Position numbers and translations under genes: made by a program. Shown here piece by piece: positions 88-31,242 of a stretch of 64,000 nt of DNA. The notes under the pieces were generated by a model, which had not been told where the DNA came from, searched no databases, and saw only the letters and a program-made list of their open reading frames with translations. Within the stretch, counting starts at the first letter, position 1; each line of letters begins with the position of its first letter. Location of the stretch: positions 372,001 through 436,000 of the IMG/VR virus record IMGVR_UViG_3300046616_000314. One strand, 5' to 3'.

Positions 88-354
88 TTATAGCCATTTC
101 AATTTGAACAATGTCGCGTCATCTTCAGATTGGAATTCAATACTGTAGCTATTGATAGTTTTGTCTTCGGGGTCTTCATCAGACCAATTAAGGTGCGTGG
201 TGATCTTGATGTCATATCCCAGGTTGTCGAGACACCATTCACAAACTTCTTTGCCATGGATAGCAGGACGATAGTCGCGACCAATATAGCTCCATTCACA
301 GAGTAAGGTGTAGCCCTTCTCTTTGGTCAAATGCAATCGCGAAGTCATAGCCAT
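88..354 (-). CDS. FKLKW-family paralog, array member 1
   Basis: Ends IEFQSEDDATLFKLKWL; has EWCLDN core. Confidence 0.88.
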   Translation of the reverse strand: MAMTSRLHLTKEKGYTLLCEWSYIGRDYRPAIHGKEVCEWCLDNLGYDIKITTHLNWSDEDPEDKTINSYSIEFQSEDDATLFKLKWL

Positions 355-665
355 TTCATCTTGAACATCAGTAGATCGGCTGCGGTCTTGAATTTCAAAG
401 AATAGTAATGGGTGGCGTCCGAATGTTTGGGAGCTTTGTGACGCAGAAATAGCGGAACAAGTTCTAGATTTTGATCACACCATTCTTCAATATTTGCGGC
501 TAGTCTATAGCTATTGCACAAACGGTTGCCGACCATGCGAAAAACAAAATAGTCTCGCCAGTTCGCGCTTGGAACATCGATGGTAATTTTGTTTCGCACT
601 GATATTGGCACCTTGATTACGTGCTTCAGGTCTGATGCGCGAAGGTTTCTGGGATACTCAGTCAT
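345..665 (-). CDS. FKLKW-family paralog, member 2
   Basis: Ends LKFKTAADLLMFKMKWL; EWCDQN core. Confidence 0.88.
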   Translation of the reverse strand: MTEYPRNLRASDLKHVIKVPISVRNKITIDVPSANWRDYFVFRMVGNRLCNSYRLAANIEEWCDQNLELVPLFLRHKAPKHSDATHYYSLKFKTAADLLMFKMKWL

Positions 666-937
666 AGAAATTTCAACTTGAACTGGACCAATTGTTCGTC
701 AGTGGAATCAGGCAAACAAATCAGCCATTCGTTACCAATCATTCCGCTATTACACGTGATGTACGGAAGGGGATCGAACCCGGCGATCTTACACCATTCG
801 ATTTCATCTGGCTTGGTGATGTTGTACTCAAGTTCTTTCCCCTTCAGAACCGAGACACCATAGGGCGACCACGTTGCGAAACGAGTGAGCAACTGAGTAA
901 TGTCGATGTCGATATAGCGATCTTGTTTCATAGCCAC
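662..937 (-). CDS. FKLKW-family paralog, member 3
   Basis: Ends TDEQLVQFKLKFL; EWCKIA core. Confidence 0.88.
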   Translation of the reverse strand: MAMKQDRYIDIDITQLLTRFATWSPYGVSVLKGKELEYNITKPDEIEWCKIAGFDPLPYITCNSGMIGNEWLICLPDSTDEQLVQFKLKFL

Positions 938-1185
938 TTCAACTTGAACAGGGTCGCATCTTCTTCAGATCGAAATACCAGCTTGAGTTTTCCTACGTCT
1001 GGTTGATCAGCTTCTTGAATCCGGGGCGTAGCAATCTTGTTTTCAACACACCATTTTTTGATAGGAGGTACCCAACGGTATATGAAATATGGATTCCCCT
1101 CACTGGGATGATAATCAGGATTATGCTCTGAAAGGGTCAGAGGAATCAATGCGATATATTGACAAACGAGTGCAGTCATAGCCAC
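928..1185 (-). CDS. FKLKW-family paralog, member 4
   Basis: Ends LVFRSEEDATLFKLKWL; KWCVEN core. Confidence 0.88.
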   Translation of the reverse strand: MAMTALVCQYIALIPLTLSEHNPDYHPSEGNPYFIYRWVPPIKKWCVENKIATPRIQEADQPDVGKLKLVFRSEEDATLFKLKWL

Positions 1186-1400
1186 TTCATCTTGAACATC
1201 AACGCGGTTTCTTCGTCATCGAACACCAGTCGGAATTCTTCGTCGTCCCAGGACAGAGCGGGCATGGTAATCTTGTTGGTGGCGCACCATGACGCGACTT
1301 GCGGTCTCCAATTACACACATAGTTACCGTCTTGTGGGTAAGCGTCGATAACCAATTTAAATATCTGCATTTGTGGATAAAGATATTCAGTCATAGCCAC
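1176..1400 (-). CDS. FKLKW-family paralog, member 5
   Basis: Ends LVFDDEETALMFKMKWL; SWCATN core. Confidence 0.88.
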   Translation of the reverse strand: MAMTEYLYPQMQIFKLVIDAYPQDGNYVCNWRPQVASWCATNKITMPALSWDDEEFRLVFDDEETALMFKMKWL

Positions 1401-1615
1401 TTCAGCTTGAATAACGTTGCGTCTTCATCGTTGCGATATCCTATCCGAAACTCTTGATCGTCTATTATGCTTTGGCGCAAGTATGGGATGATGATATCGT
1501 TGGCGATACACCACTTACTGACAGCCTCGTGCCAATACCACATGCCTGAAGGTCTATTACAGCGGCATAGGTCTTTCAGTTGCGTGTATGTGTAGTAGAT
1601 GAGGATCATCGCCAT
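1391..1615 (-). CDS. FKLKW-family paralog, member 6
   Basis: Ends YRNDEDATLFKLKWL; KWCIAN core. Confidence 0.88.
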   Translation of the reverse strand: MAMILIYYTYTQLKDLCRCNRPSGMWYWHEAVSKWCIANDIIIPYLRQSIIDDQEFRIGYRNDEDATLFKLKWL

Positions 1616-1836
1616 TTCAGTTTGAAGAGTGCCGCTTCTTCTTCGGTGTCGATAAACATATCATGAACCCAATCTGTAATATAGCCCACACGACTATAAA
1701 TTGGACAAGAATCTATATTATATACTATGCGATTATCGAAGCACCATTTCTCCATTTCGGGAAGCAACTCCCATTCATTCCAATCAAATTGGGTGACTTC
1801 GCGGTCGTATAGACTGATACGGGTACGGACCATCAC
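1606..1836 (-). CDS. FKLKW-family paralog, member 7
   Basis: Ends IDTEEEAALFKLKWR; KWCFDN core. Confidence 0.88.
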   Translation of the reverse strand: MMVRTRISLYDREVTQFDWNEWELLPEMEKWCFDNRIVYNIDSCPIYSRVGYITDWVHDMFIDTEEEAALFKLKWR

Positions 1837-1994
1837 ACACCGGGTATGTGTCTAGAGTGATATTCCCGTTGATAATCGCTACACTGATCAAAATAGCCCG
1901 TCATGCAGATGGGACATTCGGGTTGATAATGTTCCTCTTCTTGCGAAGACCCTTGCCACCAATTCCAGATAGCCTTGAGAATTTTCATAGCCAT
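1833..1994 (-). CDS. 53-aa non-family passenger gene with a CPIC motif (MAMKILKAIWNWWQGSSQEEEHYQPECPICMTGYFDQCSDYQREYHSRHIPGV)
   Basis: Translated by hand (below the ORF-track cutoff); starts in the standard junction of member 8 and its TGA overlaps the start of member 7. Confidence 0.75.
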   Translation of the reverse strand: MAMKILKAIWNWWQGSSQEEEHYQPECPICMTGYFDQCSDYQREYHSRHIPGV

Positions 1995-2245
1995 TTGAAC
2001 CTAAACATCACGGCATCTTCGGGAGATTTGAACAGATAGCCGATATGTCTCGATGGGTGAGCCGCATTAGTGAACTCAGGGAAATATCCTAGACTATCCA
2101 CGCACCATTCATAGATGGTTTCTTCAAACGCTATGTATGCATCGGGACCGGCTGTCTTGTTATTACTATGCCACGTCAATAGGTCGCGGATGCCTTCAAA
2201 GACAACATGACAATCAATGATTTCGAAATTATAGGTCATAGCCAC
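1985..2245 (-). CDS. FKLKW-family paralog, member 8
   Basis: Ends LFKSPEDAVMFRFKWL; EWCVDS core. Confidence 0.88.
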   Translation of the reverse strand: MAMTYNFEIIDCHVVFEGIRDLLTWHSNNKTAGPDAYIAFEETIYEWCVDSLGYFPEFTNAAHPSRHIGYLFKSPEDAVMFRFKWL

Positions 2246-2517
2246 TTCAGCTTGAATAGCATCGCAGTCTCTTCGTCACATTCCAGATGGACATAACCAA
2301 TAACGGTTTCCGGCTGTGGATGATCCGCAAGCGCGCCCGTGATAAAGAATTCTTCTATAATAAAGAGAATGGGTGCATTGCCGATGCCGTTCTTTTTGCA
2401 CCATCGTATTTGGGATAAATTCTGTAAAACATAGCCACGATCTACCGTATCCCAAAGATATTCGGAACAGCGTTCAAGACCAAAGATTTCGTAATAGGTC
2501 ATCGGAAGTTTCGTCAT
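2236..2517 (-). CDS. FKLKW-family paralog, member 9
   Basis: Ends CDEETAMLFKLKWL; RWCKKN core. Confidence 0.88.
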   Translation of the reverse strand: MTKLPMTYYEIFGLERCSEYLWDTVDRGYVLQNLSQIRWCKKNGIGNAPILFIIEEFFITGALADHPQPETVIGYVHLECDEETAMLFKLKWL

Positions 2518-2777
2518 AGGAACTTCATCTTAAACATCATCGCAACTTCCATGTCGTTGGTACCTATATAGACATAGGCGACAAAATTATCCCTTCGGTA
2601 CATTTCTGTATCAACGATCAACTCCGGTGGTCCTATGATGCCATTCTTATAGCACCATTCCAACTGACCCTGGTTGCGCAAAGCATACCCGGATATTGTG
2701 TTCTCCCAAAGCCAGTCTTCGAATTTACGGGATACAAAAACTTCATCATATGTTACGGCTATTTTGATCATAGCCAT
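2514..2777 (-). CDS. FKLKW-family paralog, member 10 (sister of 9)
   Basis: Ends DMEVAMMFKMKFL; EWCYKNG core. Confidence 0.88.
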   Translation of the reverse strand: MAMIKIAVTYDEVFVSRKFEDWLWENTISGYALRNQGQLEWCYKNGIIGPPELIVDTEMYRRDNFVAYVYIGTNDMEVAMMFKMKFL

Positions 2778-3025
2778 TTCATCTTGAACAAAATGAAGTC
2801 TTCTTCAGTCCCGCCAGGGAACACCAATATCCATTCACCGGTTGGTATCGAATGCAAATGAGGACGGGCGATTTTATGCTCTCTAAACCAATTCAATTCG
2901 GGATGACGCACGGGCGCGAATGGTCGATCACCTGTTCGCCCATGGCGAGGCGCCATATGATCGCGCTCCCAATGCCCGATCTTATCCATGACAACTTCGT
3001 GGGGGATTGGAAAATCCATCAACAA
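2768..3025 (-). CDS. FKLKW-family paralog, member 11
   Basis: Ends TEEDFILFKMKWL. Confidence 0.88.
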   Translation of the reverse strand: MLMDFPIPHEVVMDKIGHWERDHMAPRHGRTGDRPFAPVRHPELNWFREHKIARPHLHSIPTGEWILVFPGGTEEDFILFKMKWL

Positions 3026-3252
3026 AACTTCAGTTTAAAAGCGATAGCTTGTTCTTCGGTGCAATCCAACGTTATGCTCCAAATCGAGGTTTGCATATCG
3101 CAGGTAGCCAATATCGTATCAAAAATTTCGTTCTTCGTACACCATTGTTTGATGTCGGCTCTGTCGATGATATAGGCTGTCAAATTATCATTCCAGTAAT
3201 ACACACCGCGCAGAACATCATTGGTGTGTTGAACATGAATATTCATAGCCAT
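3019..3252 (-). CDS. FKLKW-family paralog, member 12
   Basis: Ends CTEEQAIAFKLKFC; QWCTKN core. Confidence 0.88.
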   Translation of the reverse strand: MAMNIHVQHTNDVLRGVYYWNDNLTAYIIDRADIKQWCTKNEIFDTILATCDMQTSIWSITLDCTEEQAIAFKLKFC

Positions 3253-3518
3253 TTAATTCGCAACAACAGCAGTTGATCTTCGGTTGCATCTTCCCAGAAT
3301 AAAACCCAAGAATCGGGGTCCGAACGTAGATAAAACAAACACGGTATCGTGGGTGGTCCTTGTAGCTTACACCATTCAAGAATGTCGTCATCATTCAACG
3401 GATAGGCGGTGCGAGCATCAGGAAACAAACTTTGAACATACGTGGTAGTATCGTCATTCCGATACCAACCACGCCCCATATTGGCGACCTGATGATGGGT
3501 AAAATTTGCTATAGCCAT
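3243..3518 (-). CDS. FKLKW-family paralog, member 13
   Basis: Ends ATEDQLLLLRIKWL; EWCKLQ core. Confidence 0.85.
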   Translation of the reverse strand: MAIANFTHHQVANMGRGWYRNDDTTTYVQSLFPDARTAYPLNDDDILEWCKLQGPPTIPCLFYLRSDPDSWVLFWEDATEDQLLLLRIKWL

Positions 3519-3760
3519 TTCAGTTTGAACACCGTTGCTTGTTCATCGTCATAGAATCTCAAGAAATATCGAATACGATATTTTACACCACCTTTGATAG
3601 GACAGGGTGTTAAAAATTCTTGCTCGCGATCAATGTCAGGAATGACAATAGTATTTTTCACACACCATGTGTTGATAGCCCGGCTTAAAGTCGTCGTGGT
3701 GTTATTGCCATGAGTCAGCATCATGAGTTTATAGAATGAAACCTCTATTCTCACATCCAT
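3509..3760 (-). CDS. FKLKW-family paralog, member 14
   Basis: Ends LRFYDDEQATVFKLKWL; TWCVKN core. Confidence 0.88.
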   Translation of the reverse strand: MDVRIEVSFYKLMMLTHGNNTTTTLSRAINTWCVKNTIVIPDIDREQEFLTPCPIKGGVKYRIRYFLRFYDDEQATVFKLKWL

Positions 3761-4014
3761 TTGAGTTTAAACGCCGTAGCGTCTTCCTCTGTCTCGAATG
3801 ATGCGAAGTATCTGCGATTGGTTACGGACCAATTAGGCTCAAGCATGACAAGCGGAGGCTTGGACAGATTTAATGCACACCATGCCTCAATATGAGGATG
3901 AAATTCGGTTCGCAGTCTAAGCGGATGCCCCGACATCTGGCTATTGATCAGATTTCGATACTCAGGCGTTGGATAAGGATAGGTGTGACAATCGACCATT
4001 ATACTTACAGCCAT
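3751..4014 (-). CDS. FKLKW-family paralog, member 15
   Basis: Ends SFETEEDATAFKLKWM; AWCALN core. Confidence 0.88.
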   Translation of the reverse strand: MAVSIMVDCHTYPYPTPEYRNLINSQMSGHPLRLRTEFHPHIEAWCALNLSKPPLVMLEPNWSVTNRRYFASFETEEDATAFKLKWM

Positions 4015-4268
4015 TTGAGACTAAACGCCAAAGCGTCTTCCCCACTGGCAAATGTGCCGTAGAAATTGATCATGTATGATCTAGAATCTTGGCTATTATC
4101 CCACACGGTTTCGACTTCGGGCAATGCCGAAATATGTTCTTTGCACCATTCTTCAACGGGTCGTATGAGACCTCGCGCGGGAGCCGTTACAGTGGTTCTT
4201 ACAACCCCAGTGTATTTGAAGCCATCTTCGGGGTAATGGGTATCGATAAGAATTCTCATGATGCCCAT
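4005..4268 (-). CDS. FKLKW-family paralog, member 16
   Basis: Ends TFASGEDALAFSLKWL; EWCKEH core. Confidence 0.88.
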   Translation of the reverse strand: MGIMRILIDTHYPEDGFKYTGVVRTTVTAPARGLIRPVEEWCKEHISALPEVETVWDNSQDSRSYMINFYGTFASGEDALAFSLKWL

Positions 4269-4534
4269 TTCAGTTTGAATAGAGTGGCGTCTTCTTCATT
4301 TTTAAAACAACTGACTACTTGATCGTCACGACTGACTTTCGTTAAATTTCCAGCCATAATATAAAACGTCGGCGGAATATAACCCAAGTTCGCATGACAC
4401 CATTTGTCATACGCGGAGCCATAGTTTTCGGTATGACCTTCGGGATAGCGGTCGCGCCAAGTGGCATACCATCCTTCGGTCTCATAGAATGCATCTATGG
4501 AGAATTCACATTCGTATGGAAAATCTATAGCCAT
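4256..4534 (-). CDS. FKLKW-family paralog, member 17
   Basis: Ends CFKNEEDATLFKLKWAS; KWCHAN core. Confidence 0.88.
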   Translation of the reverse strand: MAIDFPYECEFSIDAFYETEGWYATWRDRYPEGHTENYGSAYDKWCHANLGYIPPTFYIMAGNLTKVSRDDQVVSCFKNEEDATLFKLKWAS

Positions 4535-4800
4535 TTGAGCTTGAACGAAATCATTTCTTCTTCAGAATAAAATGTTAGCACGAACGCAGGCGAATTAACA
4601 TATTCTTCATTCGAGAGGTTGTTCCGACGTGGATGGAATGATGACAACGGAGGATGCGAAAGATATTTCAGACACCAGTGTTTGATGTCTGGTCGCAGTA
4701 TCAAATTTCCACCGGCAAGTTCATACGCCAGAGAGTCTTTGTCCCACAAAGCCAAGGACTCTTTGACCGTGATAGTAATGGTGCTCATGATCATAACCAC
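4525..4800 (-). CDS. FKLKW-family paralog, member 18
   Basis: Ends LTFYSEEEMISFKLKWL; HWCLKY core. Confidence 0.88.
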   Translation of the reverse strand: MVMIMSTITITVKESLALWDKDSLAYELAGGNLILRPDIKHWCLKYLSHPPLSSFHPRRNNLSNEEYVNSPAFVLTFYSEEEMISFKLKWL

Positions 4801-5060
4801 TTCAATTTGAAAGCCAGGGCGTCTTCGTCGTGTTCGAAATGAAGTCTAACTTTCCACTTTAATTTTCCAGATGATAGAGCATCACCATCAGGGCGTTCCA
4901 GGCATTCAACATACGGGAATTTTTGTAACGCCTTTTCACACCACTGGCGTACAATATACACTAGAATCCAATCATCACGCATGGTGGGAATTACCAACTG
5001 GAATGGCGTTCGGTTGACGATTCCAGACCCGTATTCGTATTCAATAACCATTACAGCCAC
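4791..5060 (-). CDS. FKLKW-family paralog, member 19
   Basis: Ends LHFEHDEDALAFKLKWL; QWCEKA core. Confidence 0.88.
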   Translation of the reverse strand: MAVMVIEYEYGSGIVNRTPFQLVIPTMRDDWILVYIVRQWCEKALQKFPYVECLERPDGDALSSGKLKWKVRLHFEHDEDALAFKLKWL

Positions 5061-5320
5061 TTCAATTTGAAGACTAGGGCATCTTCATCGGATACGAAAT
5101 CTATAGAGTATTCCCATTGCCCAAAACGAGAACCAACGAAATCCACAACAGGTAGAGCAATGGCGTTATCTTCACACCATTGAGCGACTTCGGGCGAGAG
5201 TGTCATATCATCGACAAGCCGATCACCCGACAGCACGTTCAATTTAATGACCGGCTTATAATCCGCTGACAGGATATCCCCGATGCCTACGAGATAGGTA
5301 ATCGTTGTCATGTCAGCCAC
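5051..5320 (-). CDS. FKLKW-family paralog, member 20
   Basis: Ends IDFVSDEDALVFKLKWL; QWCEDN core. Confidence 0.88.
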   Translation of the reverse strand: MADMTTITYLVGIGDILSADYKPVIKLNVLSGDRLVDDMTLSPEVAQWCEDNAIALPVVDFVGSRFGQWEYSIDFVSDEDALVFKLKWL

Positions 5321-5544
5321 TTCAATGCGAATACGGTCGCATCTTCATCTGATTTGAATTCAAGATAGAACGTATCGTCACCACCGAATCTTCCGGCGTA
5401 TTCCACTTTGGGAAGCATGGACAGATGTTTGTGACACCAGTGTCGTGCATCGTCGGTAAGCATCCACTTGCCGCCGAAACGATCAACGAGCCATTTTACC
5501 ATTGCTGGTTTTGGCAAAATGTATTCGAGAACGATCATAGCCAT
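5308..5544 (-). CDS. FKLKW-family paralog, member 21
   Basis: Ends LEFKSDEDATVFALKWLT; start placed at the junction MAM (track gives 5565). Confidence 0.85.
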   Translation of the reverse strand: MAMIVLEYILPKPAMVKWLVDRFGGKWMLTDDARHWCHKHLSMLPKVEYAGRFGGDDTFYLEFKSDEDATVFALKWLT

Positions 5545-5795
5545 TTCAACTTGAACGCGGTACAATCTTCGTCTGTTTCAAATCTAAGTTCAACAACCCA
5601 CGATTCTGGTTTGATGAACTTTAATTGTTCCGCGCGAGGAATTGCAGATAGATGCTTAGCCGCCCAATCTTTTGCTTTCGGCATTAATTCCCATACCATG
5701 GGATTACCACTGGTGTCCGATGGACTAACGAGACCGTCGTACTGAAGACTTATCAATTGATCAAATGTTAAAGTTAGAAGAATGTTCATAGCCAT
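5535..5795 (-). CDS. FKLKW-family paralog, member 22
   Basis: Ends LRFETDEDCTAFKLKWL. Confidence 0.88.
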   Translation of the reverse strand: MAMNILLTLTFDQLISLQYDGLVSPSDTSGNPMVWELMPKAKDWAAKHLSAIPRAEQLKFIKPESWVVELRFETDEDCTAFKLKWL

Positions 5796-6031
5796 TTCAA
5801 CTTAAAAAGTACGGCGTTCTCTTCGGTATTGAAATACGCAATGTAATGCGTTCCTGCCGAAAATTCAGGACGATACGAACGAAGATCAACGAGACCTTCC
5901 TTTCTCCATTCAACCACCGGGTCTCGATCTTGCGCATTAATGAGGCTGCTTCCGAAGGCTTTTTGAATCTTCGGAGGTTGGTCGTTTCTAATGGAGCGTA
6001 CCCAAGATACCTGAAATGGAGTCATAGCCAC
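5786..6031 (-). CDS. FKLKW-family paralog, member 23 (QPPKIQ subfamily)
   Basis: Ends AYFNTEENAVLFKLKWL. Confidence 0.88.
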   Translation of the reverse strand: MAMTPFQVSWVRSIRNDQPPKIQKAFGSSLINAQDRDPVVEWRKEGLVDLRSYRPEFSAGTHYIAYFNTEENAVLFKLKWL

Positions 6032-6261
6032 TTCATCCGAAATAGCAGGGCGTTCTCTTCAGTATCGAAATAGGCGGTATACTCTCTACCATTGGAGCCA
6101 TGCAGCCCGGCGGATATAGTGATAAGACCCTGCCATTCGTCCTTGGGTTCACGTGTGCGCGCAATATCAGTCGAAATGATCGTGCTACCGAAGACTGCTT
6201 GAATCTTCGGAGGTTGTTGGTTTGAACTCGTGCGCCGCCACTTTACCGGGATCATAACCAT
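6022..6261 (-). CDS. FKLKW-family paralog, member 24 (QPPKIQ subfamily)
   Basis: Ends AYFDTEENALLFRMKWL. Confidence 0.88.
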   Translation of the reverse strand: MVMIPVKWRRTSSNQQPPKIQAVFGSTIISTDIARTREPKDEWQGLITISAGLHGSNGREYTAYFDTEENALLFRMKWL

Positions 6262-6533
6262 TTCATCCGAAATAGGAGAGCGTCGTCTTCAGATTCAAAT
6301 CTAAAATATACCCAAGCGCGATGATCATTACCCGCGATTTTAACGGGTGACGATGCTCCGCGTTCTTTGAACGCTTGATACTGAAGAGATACAATCACAC
6401 CCGTAGCATCGCACCATTTCTGCACGGGTGGATCAAACATCACCGTCCATTGACCAAAACCGGTGAATGACACAAGGTTTTGTTTTCTGAAGTCTTGATA
6501 GAATTCAGTAATACATGCACCAGTCATAACCAC
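6252..6533 (-). CDS. FKLKW-family paralog, member 25
   Basis: Ends FRFESEDDALLFRMKWL; KWCDAT core. Confidence 0.88.
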   Translation of the reverse strand: MVMTGACITEFYQDFRKQNLVSFTGFGQWTVMFDPPVQKWCDATGVIVSLQYQAFKERGASSPVKIAGNDHRAWVYFRFESEDDALLFRMKWL

Positions 6534-7332: not shown

Positions 7333-7338
7333 GCGCCC

Positions 7339-7366
7339 ATTTTAGCACATGACGAGAATATCTCAA
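7339..7366 (-). promoter_or_regulatory. Internal early-type promoter TTGAGA-N16-TAAAAT with extended -10
   Basis: Lies in the 30-bp gap between members 28 and 27; same 16-bp spacing as the other early promoters in the window. Confidence 0.6.
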
Positions 7367-7835: not shown

Positions 7836-8113
7836 TTCAACTTAAACAGTGTGATGAATTCGTCGGTAGCGGCATCATCGAAAACAATTTTACCTTGCCA
7901 TCCTGGCGAATCCAATGACATATCTCTAGGATGAAACACGATTAATTCTTGGATGGGGAAGCCGTGATGAGTACACCAGTTTGTAATTTCACCTGACACT
8001 ACCCGATAGCATAATGTCCAACGGTCACTTTTACTCTCCGTTTTCAACATTACCTCATGTTGGAAATAATGCACAAGCCTATGATATGGCATTTCAATAT
8101 GCATTAGAGCCAC
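7826..8113 (-). CDS. FKLKW-family paralog, member 30 (sister of 29)
   Basis: Ends ATDEFITLFKLKWS; NWCTHH core. Confidence 0.88.
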   Translation of the reverse strand: MALMHIEMPYHRLVHYFQHEVMLKTESKSDRWTLCYRVVSGEITNWCTHHGFPIQELIVFHPRDMSLDSPGWQGKIVFDDAATDEFITLFKLKWS

Positions 8114-8343
8114 TTCATCTTAAAGAGTAGGGCGTCGTCTTCGTTATCGAAATACAAAACGTAATCGCGAGAACGCGAGCCCTTTTCAAAAGCAAGGACT
8201 ATTTCAAATTCTGGCGCCTTGGTTAGATGCTTGGCGTTCCACTCTTCGACTTCGGCGCAGAATTGCCATGTCGTACCGCTATAGCGAACGAGGTATTTGT
8301 CGAACTGATTAAGGGTGCAAAAGACTTCAGTCAGCATTACCAT
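8104..8343 (-). CDS. FKLKW-family paralog, member 31
   Basis: Ends LYFDNEDDALLFKMKWL; start refined to MVMLTEV. Confidence 0.85.
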   Translation of the reverse strand: MVMLTEVFCTLNQFDKYLVRYSGTTWQFCAEVEEWNAKHLTKAPEFEIVLAFEKGSRSRDYVLYFDNEDDALLFKMKWL

Positions 8344-8573
8344 TCCAGGGCGGATGAGCCCCATTTCATTTTGAAGGTAACGGCATCTTCTTCACGATAG
8401 AAACAGATGTCGAAGGTCGTCCACCCCATCTTCTCGATTTTGAATTCTTTGATTTCGGCATTGCGAAACCATTCCCGAATCTCTTCACGAAATTCAGGAA
8501 GCCCATGCCGGATGGGATACTTGAACAAAAATTGTGTATCGGTGTTGACCGGGACTCGTGTGATCTCAACCAT
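8337..8573 (-). CDS. FKLKW-family paralog, member 32
   Basis: CFYREEDAVTFKMKWG plus a short tail. Confidence 0.88.
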   Translation of the reverse strand: MVEITRVPVNTDTQFLFKYPIRHGLPEFREEIREWFRNAEIKEFKIEKMGWTTFDICFYREEDAVTFKMKWGSSALEW

Positions 8574-8820
8574 TGGTATGCCATTTCAATTCGTAAAGAA
8601 CCATGTCTTCATCCGTGGCGAACGTGACATCGATCCACGTTTGGGATCGCTGCTTAGGACGCTGACCGCTATTCGCCCAGTTAAGTCGTTGCATGGCGGT
8701 CAACGGAATCAATTCGGAAACAGCCTCAAAGAGTGGTGATTCGGACAAATGATCCCGGCACCATTCCCGAACTTCATCCCAGGTTTCCACGGGGGTCCGA
8801 AATGTTCTAATCTTAGTCAT
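8566..8820 (-). CDS. FKLKW-family paralog, member 33
   Basis: TFATDEDMVLYELKWHTNG; EWCRDH core. Confidence 0.88.
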   Translation of the reverse strand: MTKIRTFRTPVETWDEVREWCRDHLSESPLFEAVSELIPLTAMQRLNWANSGQRPKQRSQTWIDVTFATDEDMVLYELKWHTNG

Positions 8821-8821
8821 C

Positions 8822-9031
8822 TTAGCCCCATTTCAATTTGAATAGTGTTTGGTCTTCAATATTATGAATAACGATATACGTCACCATAGTCCATCGACCA
8901 TCGCGGCGAACATAATCTGGCATCATACACCAATTACCAGAGAGACACCGATGGCACCAATCGCCACATGCGTTGTAGACCGCATGGGAAATTTCGAACT
9001 TGTCGTCGGTCCAATCTCCAACTTGGATCAT
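8822..9031 (-). CDS. FKLKW-family paralog, member 34
   Basis: Ends HNIEDQTLFKLKWG; DWCHRC core. Confidence 0.88.
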   Translation of the reverse strand: MIQVGDWTDDKFEISHAVYNACGDWCHRCLSGNWCMMPDYVRRDGRWTMVTYIVIHNIEDQTLFKLKWG

Positions 9032-9246
9032 CCGAATTTCATCTTGAACAACATGGCATCTTCGTCACTGTCGAAAATGACATAATACGCTCTATATTTT
9101 CCGGTGGGACCAAGCACGAGATCATCATAAAAATACGACCGCTTCAGATTTTGTTTTGTCCAATACCTAGACGCCCAAAAGGTCGCTTGGGTGATTTCAT
9201 AGCGATTGGCGAAATGTCCGTTGCTTAGTTTCATGCCCCGCACCAC
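9028..9246 (-). CDS. FKLKW-family paralog, member 35
   Basis: Ends VIFDSDEDAMLFKMKFG. Confidence 0.85.
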   Translation of the reverse strand: MVRGMKLSNGHFANRYEITQATFWASRYWTKQNLKRSYFYDDLVLGPTGKYRAYYVIFDSDEDAMLFKMKFG

Positions 9247-9728
9247 TTTATTTTGTATTTCGCGGCTTCGATTTCATCAACGAAATCGATATGCAGTTCG
9301 ACCATTTCGGGTTGATTGGGAACCACATTCGTTCGTTTGATATGGTAGCCCTTCTTGACTTCTTTTTTACACCATTCGCGAACGTGTTCAGGAAAACGCC
9401 AATCCGTATCAATGTATTTCTTTACATCGAAATTATGGCAAGTAATCACCAAGGTATGATACTTGATGAATGCTTCTTTGAATTCGTTCGCGTGTTCACG
9501 GGTCTTGAATGTTATTTCGTAATGGGCGAGCACCGTGCGTTTTTTATCCGACACTAGGTTATGATCGACCGTGGTACTTGTGCGAAGAGTACAGGGATAA
9601 CCCGAATTGGCGATCCAATCGCGAACAGCCGGAAGCAACTCGCCCTTTTTGTTGAAGAAGAACGCTTCATGCAAAATATAATCAACGACATAACGATTGC
9701 CGTGAAAATTTACGCAGATTCTATGCAT
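9231..9728 (-). CDS. FKLKW-family double-domain paralog, member 36 (165 aa)
   Basis: Internal ITFKTREHANEF plus terminal IDFVDEIEAAKYKIKWCGA. Confidence 0.88.
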   Translation of the reverse strand: MHRICVNFHGNRYVVDYILHEAFFFNKKGELLPAVRDWIANSGYPCTLRTSTTVDHNLVSDKKRTVLAHYEITFKTREHANEFKEAFIKYHTLVITCHNFDVKKYIDTDWRFPEHVREWCKKEVKKGYHIKRTNVVPNQPEMVELHIDFVDEIEAAKYKIKWCGA

Positions 9729-10011
9729 TATGCCATTTCAGTTTGAACATGACCATTTCGTCTTCTTTTTCGAAACAGACACAGATATATCCAGGGTACG
9801 AACCGTTCGTACCATATGCGACAATTTCGTATTTTGCCAGGATATTTTCGTCAAACCACGCTTGGGTCTCGGGGTTCAGGCGCAATTGATAGGGATCGAC
9901 CATTTCGTGCAATTGTTCGCGCGACACACCGATTGTAATCTCGTACGGTAATCGTTGTTGAGCCGATCTCATCCGTTGATCGCTCATCGTTCTAGAAGAT
10001 GCCACTTTCAT
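9721..10011 (-). CDS. FKLKW-family paralog, member 37
   Basis: Ends VCFEKEDEMVMFKLKWHNA. Confidence 0.88.
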   Translation of the reverse strand: MKVASSRTMSDQRMRSAQQRLPYEITIGVSREQLHEMVDPYQLRLNPETQAWFDENILAKYEIVAYGTNGSYPGYICVCFEKEDEMVMFKLKWHNA

Positions 10012-10012
10012 A

Positions 10013-10291
10013 CTAGCCCCATTTCAGTTTGAAGATGGTGGCGTGGTCCTCACGATCAAATTCGATAATAAGATAAGATGGGGTGTCATCTGGTGAACGG
10101 CTAAGCATGTCAGCCGAAAAGGCGCCATAACCTTTCATCAAATAGGCATGACTCTCAATCCCGTTGGCACGCATCCATTCACCGATGGCTCCCGTGAATT
10201 TAAATCCTCCGACAGCATACATCATGTCACGAGTCATCGCGTTGATAATCGAGGCGGGTTGATGGAGTGTGACGCGATGAGCTTTGCGCAT
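10013..10291 (-). CDS. FKLKW-family paralog, member 38
   Basis: Ends IEFDREDHATIFKLKWG. Confidence 0.88.
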   Translation of the reverse strand: MRKAHRVTLHQPASIINAMTRDMMYAVGGFKFTGAIGEWMRANGIESHAYLMKGYGAFSADMLSRSPDDTPSYLIIEFDREDHATIFKLKWG

Positions 10292-10597
10292 TTAGAGCCA
10301 CTTCATCTTGAACATCAGAAATTTTTCATCATCATCAAACGGACGCTCGAAACGCAAGATGAGAGAAAACGGAACCGGTGTTGGAGACGCCATATCAAGT
10401 GCTGGCTTAGGAATACCGTTGTCAGCGCACCATTGAGCAACTTCATCACGAACTTGAACCAAGTCCTCATGACGCAATGCCAAACCACTACTGGTGGTCT
10501 TCAACATTACGAGCATCCGAAGTGCGGGAATCCAATCTTCGGGACCTATGGCTTTTGCACGGTCTTCCGTTATAACGATTTCCATCATCAGAGCCAC
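10292..10597 (-). CDS. FKLKW-family paralog, member 39
   Basis: Ends DDEKFLMFKMKWL; QWCADN core. Confidence 0.88.
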   Translation of the reverse strand: MALMMEIVITEDRAKAIGPEDWIPALRMLVMLKTTSSGLALRHEDLVQVRDEVAQWCADNGIPKPALDMASPTPVPFSLILRFERPFDDDEKFLMFKMKWL

Positions 10598-10836
10598 TTC
10601 ATTTTGAACATCAGGGCATTCTCATCGGATTGGAAAGTTAGTTCGTACATAGTTCTAACCCCAGATGGGTTTTCCAGTATGATACGCGATTTAATAATCC
10701 GAGGTAGTTCAATATCATTTTCTGCACACCATGCCCATACGTCATCGGACAATCCGACGTAATGATAGGGCGTACCTTTTACGCTCTGCCATTTCAGCAA
10801 GTGTTCGGACCAAGATATTGAGAGCTTGTTATGCAT
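10588..10836 (-). CDS. FKLKW-family paralog, member 40
   Basis: Ends LTFQSDENALMFKMKWL; AWCAEN core. Confidence 0.88.
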   Translation of the reverse strand: MHNKLSISWSEHLLKWQSVKGTPYHYVGLSDDVWAWCAENDIELPRIIKSRIILENPSGVRTMYELTFQSDENALMFKMKWL

Positions 10837-10880
10837 TAGACTAAGTAGTTGTGTGGCATTGTGTCACCTAGGAGATTATC

Positions 10881-11027
10881 ATGGCTCTATTATTTGCAGT
10901 TCTGGTTCTTGCTGGCTTTGGTTTTTGGTGGTTGGCGACTTGGCCCGTCGCATACGCCGAGCGTATTGCTAAGGGTTTATTCTTTTTCGCAGCCCTTGTG
11001 TGGTTCTTTACTAAGGTAACGATTTAA
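10881..11027 (+). CDS. 48-aa two-helix membrane protein inserted antisense inside the array (MALLFAVLVLAGFGFWWLATWPVAYAERIAKGLFFFAALVWFFTKVTI)
   Basis: Translated by hand; AGGAGA Shine-Dalgarno 5 nt upstream; two hydrophobic segments; followed by a hairpin. Confidence 0.8.
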   Translation: MALLFAVLVLAGFGFWWLATWPVAYAERIAKGLFFFAALVWFFTKVTI

Positions 11028-11034
11028 TAATACT

Positions 11035-11072
11035 ATCGTCGTTCTCTTTCAATCCAGACGGAGAACGACGAT
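11035..11072. terminator. Hairpin ATCGTCGTTCTC-N14-GAGAACGACGAT between convergent genes
   Basis: 12-bp perfect inverted repeat. Confidence 0.65.
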
Positions 11073-11329
11073 CACAACCATTTCATCTTAAACATTAGAG
11101 CATCTTCGTCTGATTTGAAATGTAATAAAATATCCGTCCAATGGGCTGATCCGCCGTTGGGTTCGACGCGGCATCGCCCGATCATTTTAATTTTTGGCAG
11201 GGTTATGTGTTTCTCACACCATGGGCGGATATCATCAGCGATGAACGGTGTGCTAAGAGCTTTGAATCTCTTGTAGCAAAACCATTGGATCACATGATGA
11301 TTTGAATGCACCGTTATAATCATTGCCAT
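11072..11329 (-). CDS. FKLKW-family paralog, member 41
   Basis: Ends LHFKSDEDALMFKMKWL; start refined to the junction MAM. Confidence 0.85.
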   Translation of the reverse strand: MAMIITVHSNHHVIQWFCYKRFKALSTPFIADDIRPWCEKHITLPKIKMIGRCRVEPNGGSAHWTDILLHFKSDEDALMFKMKWL

Positions 11330-11589
11330 TTCAACTTGAATAGAGTCGCGTCTTCTTCTGATTTGAAGAACACTTCGCATATCATATGATCTGACCTTCG
11401 GTTCTTTATAAAAGCACAATCAACACTTACGTAACGATCTGCGCGTCTAAATTTGGGGAATTCCATCCCCTGTTCTTCCATCCAAGCTTCAACGTTGGGA
11501 TGCCATTTGGCTTGGTCCGCAACCGAAGTCTTCTCCGGTGTGAACAGGAAAATATGCGAATACCAAATAACGTCTGTCTTCATTGCCAT
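11320..11589 (-). CDS. FKLKW-family paralog, member 42
   Basis: Ends VFFKSEEDATLFKLKWQ. Confidence 0.88.
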   Translation of the reverse strand: MAMKTDVIWYSHIFLFTPEKTSVADQAKWHPNVEAWMEEQGMEFPKFRRADRYVSVDCAFIKNRRSDHMICEVFFKSEEDATLFKLKWQ

Positions 11590-11855
11590 TTCAATTTAAA
11601 CAAAGCGGCATCTTCTTCGGATGCGAAGAATAGTTCATAGACAGCATGATTAGCCGCCTTACCATCCCTACCAGTAAGGGTTCGGATACGAGGCGAGCGT
11701 TTTATGAATGGAACGAACATTTCATTCGTTTTACACCATGCCAATGCTTCATCGGTAAGCTGTACTCTGAAATTCGAATCGTCGGCTTTACTACGGGTCC
11801 ATTCGAAAATTTCGTTGGTCCAATAGATATCGGTTTGCCAGAATTCAGCTTTCAC
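11580..11855 (-). CDS. FKLKW-family paralog, member 43 (sister of 42)
   Basis: Ends LFFASEEDAALFKLKWQ; GTG start at 11855 overlaps the stop of the upstream passenger gene. Confidence 0.8.
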   Translation of the reverse strand: MKAEFWQTDIYWTNEIFEWTRSKADDSNFRVQLTDEALAWCKTNEMFVPFIKRSPRIRTLTGRDGKAANHAVYELFFASEEDAALFKLKWQ

Positions 11856-12045
11856 TAGGCGAGGCGTCCTTGCCGATCCGAGCCTTGCCAGCCTGAACTT
11901 TCTTGCGTCCAGCTTGCGATAAGGCACCTTCGAATGTTTCGAAGCGTGACGGGACTTTCGCATTGGGATGTTGCCAGATGATCCACGAACCATCGGCTTG
12001 TTTCAGTTCAATGCGCCAGAGGCGTTCAACTTGATCGGTCATCAT
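11845..12045 (-). CDS. 66-aa non-family passenger gene
   Basis: Fills the gap between members 44 and 43; protein-like sequence (LWRIELKQADGSWIIW...FETFEGALSQA). Confidence 0.6.
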   Translation of the reverse strand: MMTDQVERLWRIELKQADGSWIIWQHPNAKVPSRFETFEGALSQAGRKKVQAGKARIGKDASPSES

Positions 12046-12075
12046 CGTTCTCGAAACGTGGCTGATTCCGATATT

Positions 12076-12393
12076 TTACATCCATTTCAGCTTGAATGCA
12101 ACGGCGGCATCTTCACTGTCGAATTCAACTACGTATTCTACGTCAATGAAGCCTCCATCATCGACTTCAACCCGTCTAGCAAAACCCTTGGTGGCGCCAT
12201 CCGAAGTAAATGCTTCCATAACTTCGGAACGAAAATTCCAATAACCATTGGCGAGTGTCCCTTGACACAATGACATTCCAAATTCTTGAATGCGACCGGG
12301 GTGGGTATAACGAGCGGCGGACAGCACGCGATTCAAGCCCAGTGGATCAATAAACGAGCGACGGAACCATGAAACGCGATATGTCATAGCCAC
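12076..12393 (-). CDS. FKLKW-family paralog, member 44
   Basis: Ends VEFDSEDAAVAFKLKWM. Confidence 0.88.
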   Translation of the reverse strand: MAMTYRVSWFRRSFIDPLGLNRVLSAARYTHPGRIQEFGMSLCQGTLANGYWNFRSEVMEAFTSDGATKGFARRVEVDDGGFIDVEYVVEFDSEDAAVAFKLKWM

Positions 12394-12662
12394 TTCAACT
12401 TGAATGCAACCATGTCTTCTTCAGTCTCAAAATCGACATCGTATCTTGCAAAATTTTGACCGGGGACACCAAGGCTTGCACGCATGGCAATTGCGCCGTC
12501 CATTTTGAATAGTTCTAAGACAACGGGACGAATCATCCATTCATCGCCAACGTCTTTACCCTTTGGGGATAAGCAAAGGGTATCTCCGAAGTATTCATAA
12601 ATTCGTTGTGGTTGATGGTCGCGAACGGCTCGAAACCATGTAAGTGTATGTGTCATAACCAT
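12384..12662 (-). CDS. FKLKW-family paralog, member 45
   Basis: Ends VDFETEEDMVAFKLKWL. Confidence 0.88.
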   Translation of the reverse strand: MVMTHTLTWFRAVRDHQPQRIYEYFGDTLCLSPKGKDVGDEWMIRPVVLELFKMDGAIAMRASLGVPGQNFARYDVDFETEEDMVAFKLKWL

Positions 12663-12910
12663 TTCAGCTTAAATGCTACAGCGTCTTCATCGCACGCAAA
12701 ATCAAGTGTTATCGCGATAACACTTCGATCATTATTTGCCCAAGCTGCATGAATAAACTTTATTTCTTTGAAATTAATATTCTTGAACGCCCATGTCTTA
12801 AAATCGTCAGACCATATAGGATTATGTCTCCCCGCGCCGTCTGTATCCAACCGGACGTAGATTTCTAGGACTTTGGGGTATGGAATATAAAATATGCTTG
12901 TCATAGCCAT
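12653..12910 (-). CDS. FKLKW-family paralog, member 46
   Basis: Ends LDFACDEDAVAFKLKWL. Confidence 0.88.
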   Translation of the reverse strand: MAMTSIFYIPYPKVLEIYVRLDTDGAGRHNPIWSDDFKTWAFKNINFKEIKFIHAAWANNDRSVIAITLDFACDEDAVAFKLKWL

Positions 12911-13423
12911 TTCAACTTAAATGCAACCATGTCCTCTGGGGTAACAAAACACATATCCATTTCCGTAGTCTTCATACTATTATCGTTGAAGAATGCGGGC
13001 GGCGTGAGTTTGTGTTCTTCACACCATGCGACCATAGCAAGGCTGAGTTGTAGATACGATCCACCATGCCACATTATGGGATCGTATTTCCCCTTAGTTT
13101 GATATCGAACGGTGGCGCGAATTTTATTTTCTTCGATAAAACGTTTCGCTAGTTCAACACTATCAAATGTGAAGTCACATGAATATCGACTTTCTAGTAA
13201 ACTTATCCTGTCTGGTGTGGTGATCGTATTCGGAGAACGCGACAGATCGCCATCGCAAAGACGTTTCGTTTTGATAACACCAGAACCGGCAGAGGTTCGT
13301 TATCTCGACTTCAGAGGGCGCACGGAAATGTGGGCGATAGATCAGACGCGCTTCTTCACGGGGTTTCTTGATTGTCCCCACACGGCGCCGAAAATTGTTT
13401 GCGAAAATTCCGATCATAGCCAT
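12901..13423 (-). pseudogene. FKLKW-family double-domain member 47, split by a +1 frameshift near 13175-13195
   Basis: Frame A (13423-13175) holds the RFWCYQN core; the +1 frame is open 13299-12901 and reads YSCDFTFDSVELAKRF...AWCEEH...CFVTPEDMVAFKLKWL; fused product about 173 aa. Confidence 0.75.
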
Positions 13424-13674
13424 TTCAGCCTAAAGAGTGTCGCGGCTTCCGTTGAAGTGAATATGAGACGCCAGTGAGGTTTCTTATCCAGGGATCGGAA
13501 GGCTTCGGTAACGTGCAATGCCGGGTGGTTGATACTATTTTTCATGCACCAAACTTTGACGGCGTAATTCATTGCGTAGTGGCTACCACCGAGACAATGG
13601 TATTCGCCGTGTCTATTCAATAACACGATCTTATCGACTTGATCGGGTGTTATCTCAAAGCTCACGTAAGCCAC
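13414..13674 (-). CDS. FKLKW-family paralog, member 48
   Basis: Ends LIFTSTEAATLFRLKWL; VWCMKN core. Confidence 0.88.
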   Translation of the reverse strand: MAYVSFEITPDQVDKIVLLNRHGEYHCLGGSHYAMNYAVKVWCMKNSINHPALHVTEAFRSLDKKPHWRLIFTSTEAATLFRLKWL

Positions 13675-13675
13675 G

Positions 13676-13984
13676 TCACAACCATTTCAATTTGAAAGCG
13701 ACTAGATCATCCTCGGTCTTGAAACCAATGAACCAATGATAACGTTCGCCATTCGGATAGGGCACACCGCCTCCATGGTGTGACAACAGAGGTTCTACCA
13801 TATTTTGGTCGGAACACCATGCTATAATATCGTCGCGAATTCGTTCGCAGACCAAACCGATGCGTTGACGACAGCCATTCTCATCTTGCCAAGCTATATC
13901 ATCCCACTTCCAATAACTCACGGGATGATTGAAACGAGAATCAACTTCAGTCAATTCTTCGCCAGAATAAAATTTCAAAACCAT
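13676..13984 (-). CDS. FKLKW-family paralog, member 49
   Basis: Ends IGFKTEDDLVAFKLKWL; AWCSDQN core. Confidence 0.88.
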   Translation of the reverse strand: MVLKFYSGEELTEVDSRFNHPVSYWKWDDIAWQDENGCRQRIGLVCERIRDDIIAWCSDQNMVEPLLSHHGGGVPYPNGERYHWFIGFKTEDDLVAFKLKWL

Positions 13985-14202
13985 TTCAATTTGAAAAGAG
14001 TTGCATGAGTTTCATCCGCAAATTCGAATCCATAATGACCTAAGTAATTCACCGAGTTAGGATTTATGTCATTGATCTTAAGCCATTGTGCAAATGGTTC
14101 AGCCCATGTGTAATTATAAGACGGCGGCTCGTAATGGAAAATATCATTCAAATTAAGAGAATAACTAGCGGCGACTTTATACGTATTGTTCGTCAAAACC
14201 AT
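13975..14202 (-). CDS. FKLKW-family paralog, member 50
   Basis: Ends FEFADETHATLFKLKWF. Confidence 0.88.
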   Translation of the reverse strand: MVLTNNTYKVAASYSLNLNDIFHYEPPSYNYTWAEPFAQWLKINDINPNSVNYLGHYGFEFADETHATLFKLKWF

Positions 14203-18400: not shown

Positions 18401-18404
18401 CGCA

Positions 18405-31241: not shown

Positions 31242-31242
31242 C

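What the first reader, a model, noticed from the sequence alone, without database searches (positions are those of the whole stretch)
345..14202. The terminal Lys-Trp codons double as the start codon of the next gene
Seen: the usual junction AAA-TGG-CTA-TGA also reads ATG-GCT-ATG in the next gene's frame, giving two in-frame starts (10-nt and 4-nt overlaps), hence the recurring MAM/MVM N-termini. At the junctions near 3518 and 4534 the ATGA start is missing and the ATG made by the K-W codons is the only start in the junction. At others (3760, 4014, 5060, 6784, 8113) the second start is GTG or lies a few codons later. Where the domain is internal (double-domain members) or has a tail (17877-18773, 26509), KW is usually lost. 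Inference: part of the apparent protein motif is a translational re-initiation signal that lets any member be slotted behind any other and still be expressed.
Basis: partly seen in the sequence, partly recalled or inferred. Interest (0 to 1): 0.6.

Follow-up and report, generated by a model that had tools for sequence, protein, structure and literature searches.

The report
Overlapping stop-start junctions chain phage genes
About 50 small paralogous genes of a 561-kb phage are chained by ordinary overlapping stop/start codons; the start codon formed by the terminal Lys-Trp codons is a by-product of a conserved protein helix and looks needed at only a few junctions.

Summary
Window 88-14480 (minus strand) holds 52 head-to-tail members of a family with 225 ORFs in a 561,116-bp phage genome. 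Most end F-K-[LM]-K-W-x-stop. AA[AG]TGGCTATGA is the commonest junction.

- **What is selected is the stop-overlapping ATG.** The last codon ends in A in 65% of members, against 21% for internal third positions. The stop is TGA in 73%, against 29% in long ORFs. ATGA overlaps occur at 52% of junctions, against 10% for other genes.
- **Synonymous G's track that ATG.** They sit 9 and 12 nt upstream of it and shift register between the ATGA and T[AG]ATG classes. Shine-Dalgarno cores are absent.
- **The Lys-Trp start follows automatically from a protein motif.**
  - W is replaced by F or Y in 23% of members, and those junctions keep ATGA.
  - W is equally frequent where the next gene cannot use it.
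  - AAA is not favoured over AAG.
  - Homologues in other phages, including cultured Sinorhizobium phage Phosso, keep W while the preceding codon often gives GTG or CTG.
- **It does look like a fallback start.** Where no other ATG lies nearby, it is ATG in 12 of 13 junctions (p=0.013), including 3518 and 4534.

Mechanism: known translational coupling. The uncharacterised, hugely expanded family is the more notable item.

The parts
88..14480 (-). Head-to-tail array of 52 small paralogous genes (57-185 aa, two of them double-domain). Nearly all end ...[ED][ED]DA..F[KR][LM]K[WFY]x-stop.
   Evidence: ORF list. HMM hits cover 96% of the interval. AF2 model pLDDT 88.
345..356 (-). Type example of the dual-start junction AAATGGCTATGA: K-W-L-stop read as ATG-GCT-ATG-A in the next gene's frame. 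The same 12-mer with AAA or AAG has stop ends at 928, 1176, 1391, 1985, 2236, 2768, 3243, 5535, 5786, 6022, 12384, 12901 and 13414.
3509..3520 (-). Junction AAATGGCTATAG with no ATGA. The K-W ATG is the only start at the junction; the next ATG is 13 codons downstream of it.
4525..4536 (-). Junction AAATGGCTATAG. The K-W ATG is the only in-frame ATG/GTG/TTG before the conserved domain of the next gene.
3751..3762 (-). Junction AAATGGATGTGA: K-W ATG plus a weak stop-overlapping GTG. The analogous TTGA junctions lie at 13975-13986 and 14193-14204.
5051..5062 (-). 1-nt overlap junction AAGTGGCTGTAAtg (T[AG]ATG class). Others are at 8104-8115 and 10588-10599. In this class the base 9 nt upstream of the ATG, which is the third base of the Lys codon, is G in 20 of 21 cases genome-wide.
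662..673 (-). K-F member, AAATTTCTATGA: the ATGA overlap is kept with no K-W-derived start. Other K-F junctions are at 2514-2525, 7554-7565 and 9028-9039.
13676..13687 (-). Junction where the next gene is in another frame (TGA-c-GTG), so the K-W ATG cannot serve it, yet KW is kept. The same situation occurs at 10292-10303 (TAA-ATG), 10013-10024 (TAG-t-ATG), 8822-8833 (TAA-g-ATG) and 9721-9738 (8-nt overlap).
17144..18773 (+). Four plus-strand members. The first two end ...F[KR][ML]VW. The last three carry C-terminal tails, with Y or F in place of W.
30066..31467 (+). Second, short plus-strand array of five members. It has the same AAATGGCTATGA junctions at 30405-30416 and 30722-30733.

Best explanation
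The region is a long, probably polycistronic array of diverged paralogues of an uncharacterised small phage protein of about 80 aa. Its last helix carries the motif EDA..F-K-[LM]-K-W.

The genes are chained by the ordinary prokaryotic stop/start overlaps ATGA (-4) and T[AG]ATG (-1), with no Shine-Dalgarno core. I infer that each downstream gene is translated mainly by termination-reinitiation, or tight coupling, at the stop-overlapping ATG.

Selection for this is visible only at silent or free positions:
- the final codon is NNA followed by TGA;
- G sits at the synonymous third positions 9 and 12 nt upstream of that ATG.

Because Trp is TGG and the overlap fixes the next frame, the Lys-Trp codons inevitably form an in-frame ATG or GTG 6 nt further upstream. 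That codon is a by-product of the protein motif. It is redundant at most junctions. It acts as a fallback start at the roughly 8-13 junctions that have lost the overlapping ATG.

Shown here: the anatomy, the biases and the family-wide conservation. Inferred: reinitiation as the mechanism, and which start is actually used.
For: **The overlap is selected**
- The last codon ends in A in 109/168 members, against 20.6% for internal third positions.
- Terminal Leu is CTA or TTA in 65/89 cases, against 19.6% internally.
- The stop is TGA in 73%, against 29% in long ORFs.
- ATGA junctions are 52% and T[AG]ATG 12.5% in the family, against 10% and 6% for 563 other ORFs.

**The pattern is not recent copying**
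- Nearest paralogues have a median identity of 34% and a maximum of 51%. Junction class does not follow gene-body similarity.

**No Shine-Dalgarno sequence**
- SD cores occur in 4/87 ATGA and 0/21 T[AG]ATG junctions, against 5.8% in random sequence.

**A register-shifted G signal anchored on the overlapping ATG**
- ATGA class: G at -12 is 82% against a 32% baseline (p=1e-7); G at -9 is 90% against 66% (p=0.003).
- T[AG]ATG class: G at -9 is 95% against 30% (p=1e-6).
- Non-family overlapped genes show G at 39-50% at -12 to -9.

**KW is a protein feature**
- The AF2 model places it in the terminal helix.
- 74 foreign homologues end F[KR][LM][KR]W-x.
- Phosso homologues have T/A/R-W with ACC, GCC or CGC before TGG.
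- F/Y paralogues keep ATGA.

**Fallback use**
- K-W is ATG in 12/13 junctions with no other ATG within -6 to +8, against 48/87 elsewhere (p=0.013).

**Literature**
- -4 and -1 overlaps are the commonest and give tight coupling that falls off steeply with distance (PMC10666635, PMC6728339).
- Coupling without an SD, and preference for the nearest start, are reviewed in PMC12548453.
Against:
- SD use is weak genome-wide (16% of long ORFs). De novo SD-independent initiation therefore cannot be separated from reinitiation.
- At standard junctions the two ATGs give proteins that differ by only two residues, so sequence alone cannot tell which is used.
- The -9/-12 G signal lies in codons of a conserved motif. 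It could partly reflect unknown codon-context effects.
- Loss of W in tailed members of this genome (33% against 76%) is left without a positive explanation.
Confidence: 0.7

Rival explanations
1. One reading: the K-W codons are a working re-initiation start at most junctions, and this nucleotide role helps keep the KW motif conserved.
For: - The K-W start is in frame and open at nearly all frame-2 junctions.
- It is the sole start at several junctions and is always ATG there.
- [KR]W is rarer in tailed or internal domains of this genome: 14/43 against 134/176.
- A start 4 nt upstream of the P site is within reach of a post-termination ribosome (scanning model reviewed in PMC12548453).
Against: - AAA:AAG at this Lys is 74:47 in W members, 21:12 in F/Y members and 354:280 internally. 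There is no excess.
- W frequency does not depend on whether the next gene can use the start (p=0.5).
- In other phages the codon before TGG mostly gives GTG, CTG or TTG, yet W is invariant.
- Foreign internal domains keep W in 6/8 cases.
- The upstream G signal is positioned for the overlapping ATG, not for the K-W ATG.
Confidence: 0.12
2. There is no coupling. The overlaps merely reflect genome compaction. Each gene is initiated de novo by free 30S subunits on an unstructured, SD-poor mRNA, and either ATG is used stochastically.
For: - SD cores are rare genome-wide: 16% against 6% in random sequence.
- Other genes of this phage also overlap, with ATGA at 10%.
- The RNA-unfolding model allows de novo initiation (PMC12548453).
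Against: - ATGA is five-fold enriched over other genes of the same genome.
- Third-base and stop bias is extreme.
- 83% of downstream genes lie in the one frame compatible with -4/-1 overlaps.
- Experiments on native -4/-1 pairs show tight coupling (PMC6728339, PMC10666635).
Confidence: 0.13
3. The uniform junction is inherited. Tandem duplication or short-tract gene conversion copied one junction cassette, with no selection on translation.
For: - The family is tandemly arrayed.
- 45 of 168 nearest paralogues lie within 1 kb of each other.
Against: - There are no recent copies: maximum nearest-paralogue identity is 51% and the median is 34%.
- Adjacent synonymous sites (F, K1, L, K2 third bases) are not in linkage.
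- Junction class is not shared by nearest paralogues.
- The same junction types recur in unrelated phage contigs and in Phosso.
Confidence: 0.05

Closest known systems
Translational coupling by termination-reinitiation at ATGA / TGATG gene overlaps (Huber et al. 2019, PMC6728339; Huber et al. 2023, PMC10666635; review PMC12548453)
   Same: - Co-directional genes have 4-nt or 1-nt stop/start overlaps.
- No intergenic spacer is present.
- An SD is dispensable.
- The downstream frame is fixed by the overlap.
   Different: - Here the design is repeated through about 50 consecutive paralogous genes.
- A second in-frame start lies 6 nt upstream, supplied by a conserved Lys-Trp.
- The genes are paralogues rather than known subunits of one complex.
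- Coupling itself has not been measured.
Scanning-type reinitiation at the nearest start, upstream or downstream of the stop (MS2 coat-lysis experiments of Adhin and van Duin 1990, as summarised in PMC12548453)
   Same: A post-termination ribosome could reach the K-W ATG, about 4 nt upstream of the P site, when no overlapping ATG exists. This is the situation at 3518 and 4534.
   Different: It is known from engineered or single phage junctions. Here it would be a natural fallback at a minority of junctions, and it is untested.
Lineage-specific expansion of a small domain in a giant phage: about 35 Zn-ribbon copies in Bacillus phage G, called 'unprecedented' in PMC7824862
   Same: A single small domain is massively multiplied in a very large phage genome.
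   Different: - It is a different fold.
- There are 225 ORFs here, covering 12.8% of the genome.
- The family is shared with many other phages, including Sinorhizobium phage Phosso, which gave 21 matches.
Type I KH-domain-like alpha/beta fold
   Same: The AF2 model aligns to KH domains over about 65 residues at Z 5.0-5.6.
   Different: - Z lies below the level the tool regards as meaningful.
- No conserved GxxG loop appears in the alignment.
- Foldseek found no PDB match at E<=0.001.

Membership tests
Translationally coupled overlapping gene pairs (-4 / -1 nt) | Co-directional neighbours whose stop and start overlap as ATGA or T[AG]ATG. | tested here: met
   108 of 168 family junctions genome-wide (87 ATGA, 21 T[AG]ATG) and 32 of 49 in 345-14202.
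Translationally coupled overlapping gene pairs (-4 / -1 nt) | Downstream translation depends on translation of the upstream gene. | not testable with these tools
   This needs reporter constructs or Ribo-seq.
Translationally coupled overlapping gene pairs (-4 / -1 nt) | Sequence bias beyond what the proteins require, showing that the overlap itself is maintained. | tested here: met
   NNA last codon 65% against 21%; TGA 73% against 29%; CTA/TTA 73% against 20%; register-shifted G at -9 and -12.
Independent Shine-Dalgarno-led initiation | GGAG, GAGG or AGGA core 5-15 nt upstream of the start. | tested here: not met
   4/87 ATGA and 0/21 T[AG]ATG junctions, at or below the random rate of 5.8%.
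Pfam PF22721 TBP-TOTE (the only Pfam lead) | Score at or above the gathering threshold of 27 bits. | tested here: not met
   15.6 bits, E=0.012, for one tailed member only. The other seven members scanned gave no Pfam hit to this family, and PHROGs gave only one weak hit (E=0.054) to a family of unknown function.
KH domain (type I) | Conserved GxxG loop between the first two helices, plus a clear structural match. | tested here: not met
   The alignment has no GxxG column. Best Z is 5.6, below the tool's stated noise level of 7-8.

The most novel reading that the evidence does not exclude
The 3' end of every family member would be a portable, SD-free, dual-start coupling cassette. It would consist of G's at silent sites, the K-W ATG, an NNA last codon and TGA. 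Ribosomes loaded once could then read through 50 or more genes. The K-W ATG would be a genuinely used alternative start, giving N-terminal isoforms or fail-safe expression. That would make the arrays tolerant of cassette gain, loss and shuffling.
Probability: 0.2. Interest if true: 0.55.

Novelty: new member of a known kind. Interest (0 to 1): 0.35.

Why it matters
The junction itself is textbook overlap coupling, so it does not change how translation is understood.

It is useful in three ways:
- **Annotation.** It warns annotators that MAM/MVM extensions at these genes are probably artefacts of choosing the longest ORF, except at a few junctions where the upstream ATG is the only option.
- **A natural test set.** It gives more than 100 diverged natural junctions of one design. 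These show which silent positions are tuned for SD-free coupling (NNA-TGA, and G at -9 and -12), and those predictions can be tested with reporters.
- **The gene family.** It exposes an uncharacterised protein family that fills about 13% of a 561-kb phage genome and recurs in other huge phages. One of those is cultured (Sinorhizobium phage Phosso), so the family can be studied at the bench.

Tried and rejected
- **Family scans.** Pfam and PHROGs scans of eight members gave nothing above threshold.
- **DNA similarity.** Megablast of 345-8000 against phage records found no match.
- **Word-based protein search.** With the alignment it found only the genome's own proteins, plus an identical protein on a 171-kb Logan contig. 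From its gene order I infer this is the same or a near-identical phage, so it is not an independent relative.
- **Related loci.** The search for related loci with the first alignment failed for lack of a conserved stretch. A second alignment of foreign homologues worked.
- **Fold searches.** Foldseek against PDB and BFVD, VIA-align wide and the ESM Atlas gave no convincing fold. Only KH-like and ferredoxin-like resemblances at noise level appeared, along with uncharacterised phage proteins.
- **Promoter and terminator scan.** Inside the array the counts match the shuffled controls.
- **Junction 'haplotype' idea.** I tested whether short conversion tracts explain the link between the Lys third base and the junction class. 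I rejected it because neighbouring synonymous sites are not linked.
- **AAGTGG as an SD mimic.** I considered this and did not adopt it. F/Y members of the T[AG]ATG class also have G at -9 without the GG.
Full report
**What is there**

The window is bases 372,001-436,000 of a single 561,116-bp contig with 48% GC and 36 tRNA genes.

By its SbcD-like nuclease, the closest cultured relatives are:
- Sinorhizobium phage Phosso (469 kb, 47% identity);
- PA5oct-like Pseudomonas jumbo phages.

The window also carries a baseplate-hub/lysozyme gene and other large genes without a Pfam match. The genome is therefore a very large tailed phage.

On the minus strand, 88-14480 is 96% filled by 52 head-to-tail small genes. 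They share a C-terminal domain with the consensus W..WC..N...P...F..EEDA..FKLKWL.

A profile built from that domain finds 225 stop-to-stop ORFs in the genome. 180 of them score E<1e-5. Together they cover 12.8% of the DNA, on both strands and in several arrays.

The paralogues are old:
- Nearest-paralogue identity has a median of 34% and a maximum of 51%.
- 45 of 168 nearest paralogues lie within 1 kb of each other.
- 70 of 168 lie more than 100 kb apart.

**Check of the observation**

- AA[AG]TGGCTATGA is the commonest junction. It reads K-W-L-stop in one frame and ATG/GTG-GCT-ATG-A in the next.
- Junctions 3518 and 4534 read AAATGGCTATAG and have no other start at the junction.
- 3760 has GTGA. 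5060 and 8113 have TAATG. 4014 and 6784 have an ATG a few codons later.
- In this genome, [KR]W is present in 134/176 terminal domains but only 14/43 domains followed by a 5-30 aa tail.

**What is under selection at the junction**

I collected all 168 members genome-wide whose domain ends within 4 residues of the stop.

Their downstream genes fall into these classes:

| Class | Junctions |
|---|---|
| ATGA | 87 |
| T[AG]ATG | 21 |
| [GT]TGA | 7 |
| Other frame-2 | 18 |
| Other frames | 28 |
| No downstream gene | 7 |

For 563 non-family ORFs of the same genome, the ATGA and T[AG]ATG shares are only 10% and 6%.

The biases at free positions are strong:

| Feature | Family junctions | Comparison |
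|---|---|---|
| Last sense codon ends in A | 109/168 (65%) | 20.6% at internal third positions |
| Terminal Leu is CTA or TTA | 65/89 (73%) | 19.6% internally |
| Stop is TGA | 73% | 29% of long ORFs |

The terminal residue itself varies (L, Q, S, R, G, V, I, K) while NNA-TGA is kept. Given how diverged the gene bodies are, this is purifying selection on the ATGA overlap, not recent copying.

Shine-Dalgarno cores are essentially absent: 4/87 ATGA and 0/21 T[AG]ATG junctions, against 5.8% in random sequence.

**Which ATG is the tuned one**

Aligning junctions on the stop-overlapping ATG shows G at synonymous third positions 9 and 12 nt upstream. The signal moves with the ATG. With the register held constant (one residue after W), the G frequencies are:

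| Class | Position (codon) | G observed | Baseline | p |
|---|---|---|---|---|
| ATGA | -12 (third base of the first Lys) | 59/72 | 14/44 | 1e-7 |
| ATGA | -9 (third base of Leu/Met) | 65/72 | 29/44 | 0.003 |
| ATGA | third base of the second Lys | at baseline | baseline | n.s. |
| T[AG]ATG | -9 (third base of the second Lys) | 18/19 | 13/44 | 1e-6 |

- Non-family overlapped genes of this phage show a diffuse G enrichment (39-50%) at -12 to -9.
- SD cores, where present, start at -14 to -10.
- Neighbouring synonymous sites are not linked to each other, so this is not a copied haplotype.

I read this as a minimal purine signal placed for the stop-overlapping ATG. For the K-W ATG the same G's would sit at -6 and -3, which is too close to act in that way.

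**Is the Lys-Trp motif kept because it makes a start codon?**

The evidence says no.

1. The aromatic position is W in 129 members, F in 29 and Y in 10. F/Y members keep the ATGA or T[AG]ATG overlap although they create no upstream start.
2. W is no more frequent where the next gene is in the compatible frame (104/133) than where it is in another frame or absent (25/35; p=0.5).
3. The Lys codon is AAA:AAG = 74:47 in W members, 21:12 in F/Y members and 354:280 for internal Lys. There is no excess of the ATG-forming codon.
4. An exhaustive profile search found 359 relatives. Among the best 150, 74 come from other genomes, and nearly all end F[KR][LM][KR]W plus 0-2 residues.
5. In eight other viral contigs (45 members, also in arrays, some on contigs of 415 and 607 kb), the base before TGG is mostly G. 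The overlaps (13 ATGA, 11 T[AG]ATG) and TGA (69%) recur there.
6. In cultured phage Phosso (21 matches), the motif is F-K-L-[T/A/R]-W. ACC, GCC or CGC often precedes TGG, which gives CTG rather than a start codon, yet ATGA overlaps remain common.
7. The AF2 model (pLDDT 88) places F-K-L-K-W in the C-terminal helix of a beta-alpha-beta-beta-alpha-beta-beta-alpha domain.

On the loss of W in tailed members:
- The drop is real in this genome but is not seen in foreign homologues. 6 of 8 foreign internal domains keep W, although those hits were chosen by a W-containing profile.
- F/Y variants tend to be followed by G or S, as in K[FY]G. This looks like a protein-level subfamily signature.

**Is the K-W start ever used?**

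Probably, as a fallback. Among frame-2 junctions of W members where the K-W start is in the downstream ORF:
- The 13 junctions with no other ATG within -6 to +8 of the stop have ATG in 12 cases (11 AAA-TGG, one AGA-TGG) and GTG in one.
- The 87 junctions with a nearby ATG have 48 ATG and 39 GTG (p=0.013).

In at least four of the thirteen, the next alternative start lies inside the conserved domain or does not exist. These are genome positions 2809, 128942 and 548621, and window 4534.

The likely history is that loss of the overlapping ATG is tolerated only where the Lys codon happens to be AAA.

**Mechanism**

- Overlaps of -4 and -1 are the commonest arrangement in prokaryotes. They give tight coupling that collapses within about 20 nt of spacing (PMC6728339, PMC10666635).
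- Coupling without an SD, and preference for the nearest start, are documented (PMC12548453).

From this I infer that the arrays are translated by termination-reinitiation at the overlapping ATG, with the K-W ATG about 4 nt upstream of the terminating P site as a reachable substitute.

Promoter-like and terminator-like sites inside the array are no more frequent than in shuffled sequence. That is consistent with long transcripts, but it is weak evidence.

No experimental data could be brought in.

**Comparison and novelty**

The junction belongs to a known kind, overlap coupling. Three features are unusual:
- the scale, with about 50 consecutive genes and more than 100 junctions of one design;
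- the built-in second start;
- the silent-site tuning.

The protein family has no Pfam or PHROG assignment and no convincing structural relative. Its copy number far exceeds the roughly 35-copy expansion in Bacillus phage G that a jumbo-phage survey called unprecedented (PMC7824862).

**Verdict**

Coupling junctions are real, and the K-W ATG is a fallback at a few of them. KW is not conserved for that purpose.
- Interest is modest for the junction. The gene family is the more notable item.

Noticed in passing
Whole genome G000; in the window 88-14480, 17144-18773, 26386-26778, 29456-33748: The family has 225 ORFs (180 at E<1e-5) covering 12.8% of a 561-kb phage genome. No Pfam, PHROG or PDB match was found. 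This far exceeds the roughly 35-copy expansion in Bacillus phage G that PMC7824862 called unprecedented. Relatives occur in arrays in IMG/VR contigs of up to 607 kb, and cultured Sinorhizobium phage Phosso gave 21 matches.
   Followed up: partly
Genome-wide T[AG]ATG junctions, e.g. window 5051-5062, 8104-8115, 10588-10599: In the 1-nt-overlap class the third base of the codon before the aromatic residue is G in 20 of 21 cases, against 30 of 87 in the ATGA class (p=5e-7). This includes F/Y members, where no start codon is involved. I interpret it as a G at -9 from the ATG, but the molecular reason is unknown.
   Followed up: partly
G000:C1 547938-553835: A tRNA cluster sits next to family arrays at 544-552 kb. 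It includes Leu(UAG), which reads CUA (the commonest terminal codon of the family), four other Leu tRNAs, Lys(UUU), Lys(CUU) and Trp(CCA). The genome has 36 tRNAs in all.
   Followed up: no
Window 1833-1994 (-), 13175-13423 (-), 11845-12045 (-): Non-family small ORFs are embedded in the array. The first two are joined to the upstream member by the same AAATGGCTATGA junction. The first is Cys-rich (CPIC...C) and may be a zinc-ribbon-like peptide. 13175-13423 may be a degraded member.
   Followed up: no
Plus strand opposite the array, e.g. window 3007-3276, 4089-4322, 5425-5745: One search lists many 50-110 aa ORFs on the opposite strand containing ...HSHF[NS]LN..ASSS. I read them as the mirror image of the conserved EEDA..FKLKW codons and not as genes.
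   Followed up: partly
Window 8822-8833, 10013-10024; genome 366905, 16594, 368994: Members ending K-W-G (TGG-GGN) never use ATGA. They place the next ATG 2-5 nt past the first base of the stop, so the GGGG run lies about 3-6 nt upstream of it. This may be a makeshift SD-like element.
   Followed up: no
Window 14650-17072 (-) and 41296-43284 (+): Directly upstream of the array on the same strand lie an SbcD/Mre11-like metallophosphoesterase and a Dcm-type cytosine methyltransferase. The methyltransferase assignment rests on the PF00145 hit to the matching 308-aa gene of the syntenic Logan contig. Elsewhere in the window are a baseplate hub with an SLT lysozyme domain, a BNR-repeat protein (23136-25376), and giant ORFs of 1577 and 2251 aa (the 1577-aa ORF has no Pfam match; the 2251-aa ORF was not scanned).
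   Followed up: partly
Protein P0058 (3293 aa, from another genome): A giant foreign protein was reported with five matched stretches to the family profile. My local re-scan listed only one weak internal stretch (E=0.09). The domain may also occur as an internal repeat.
   Followed up: no
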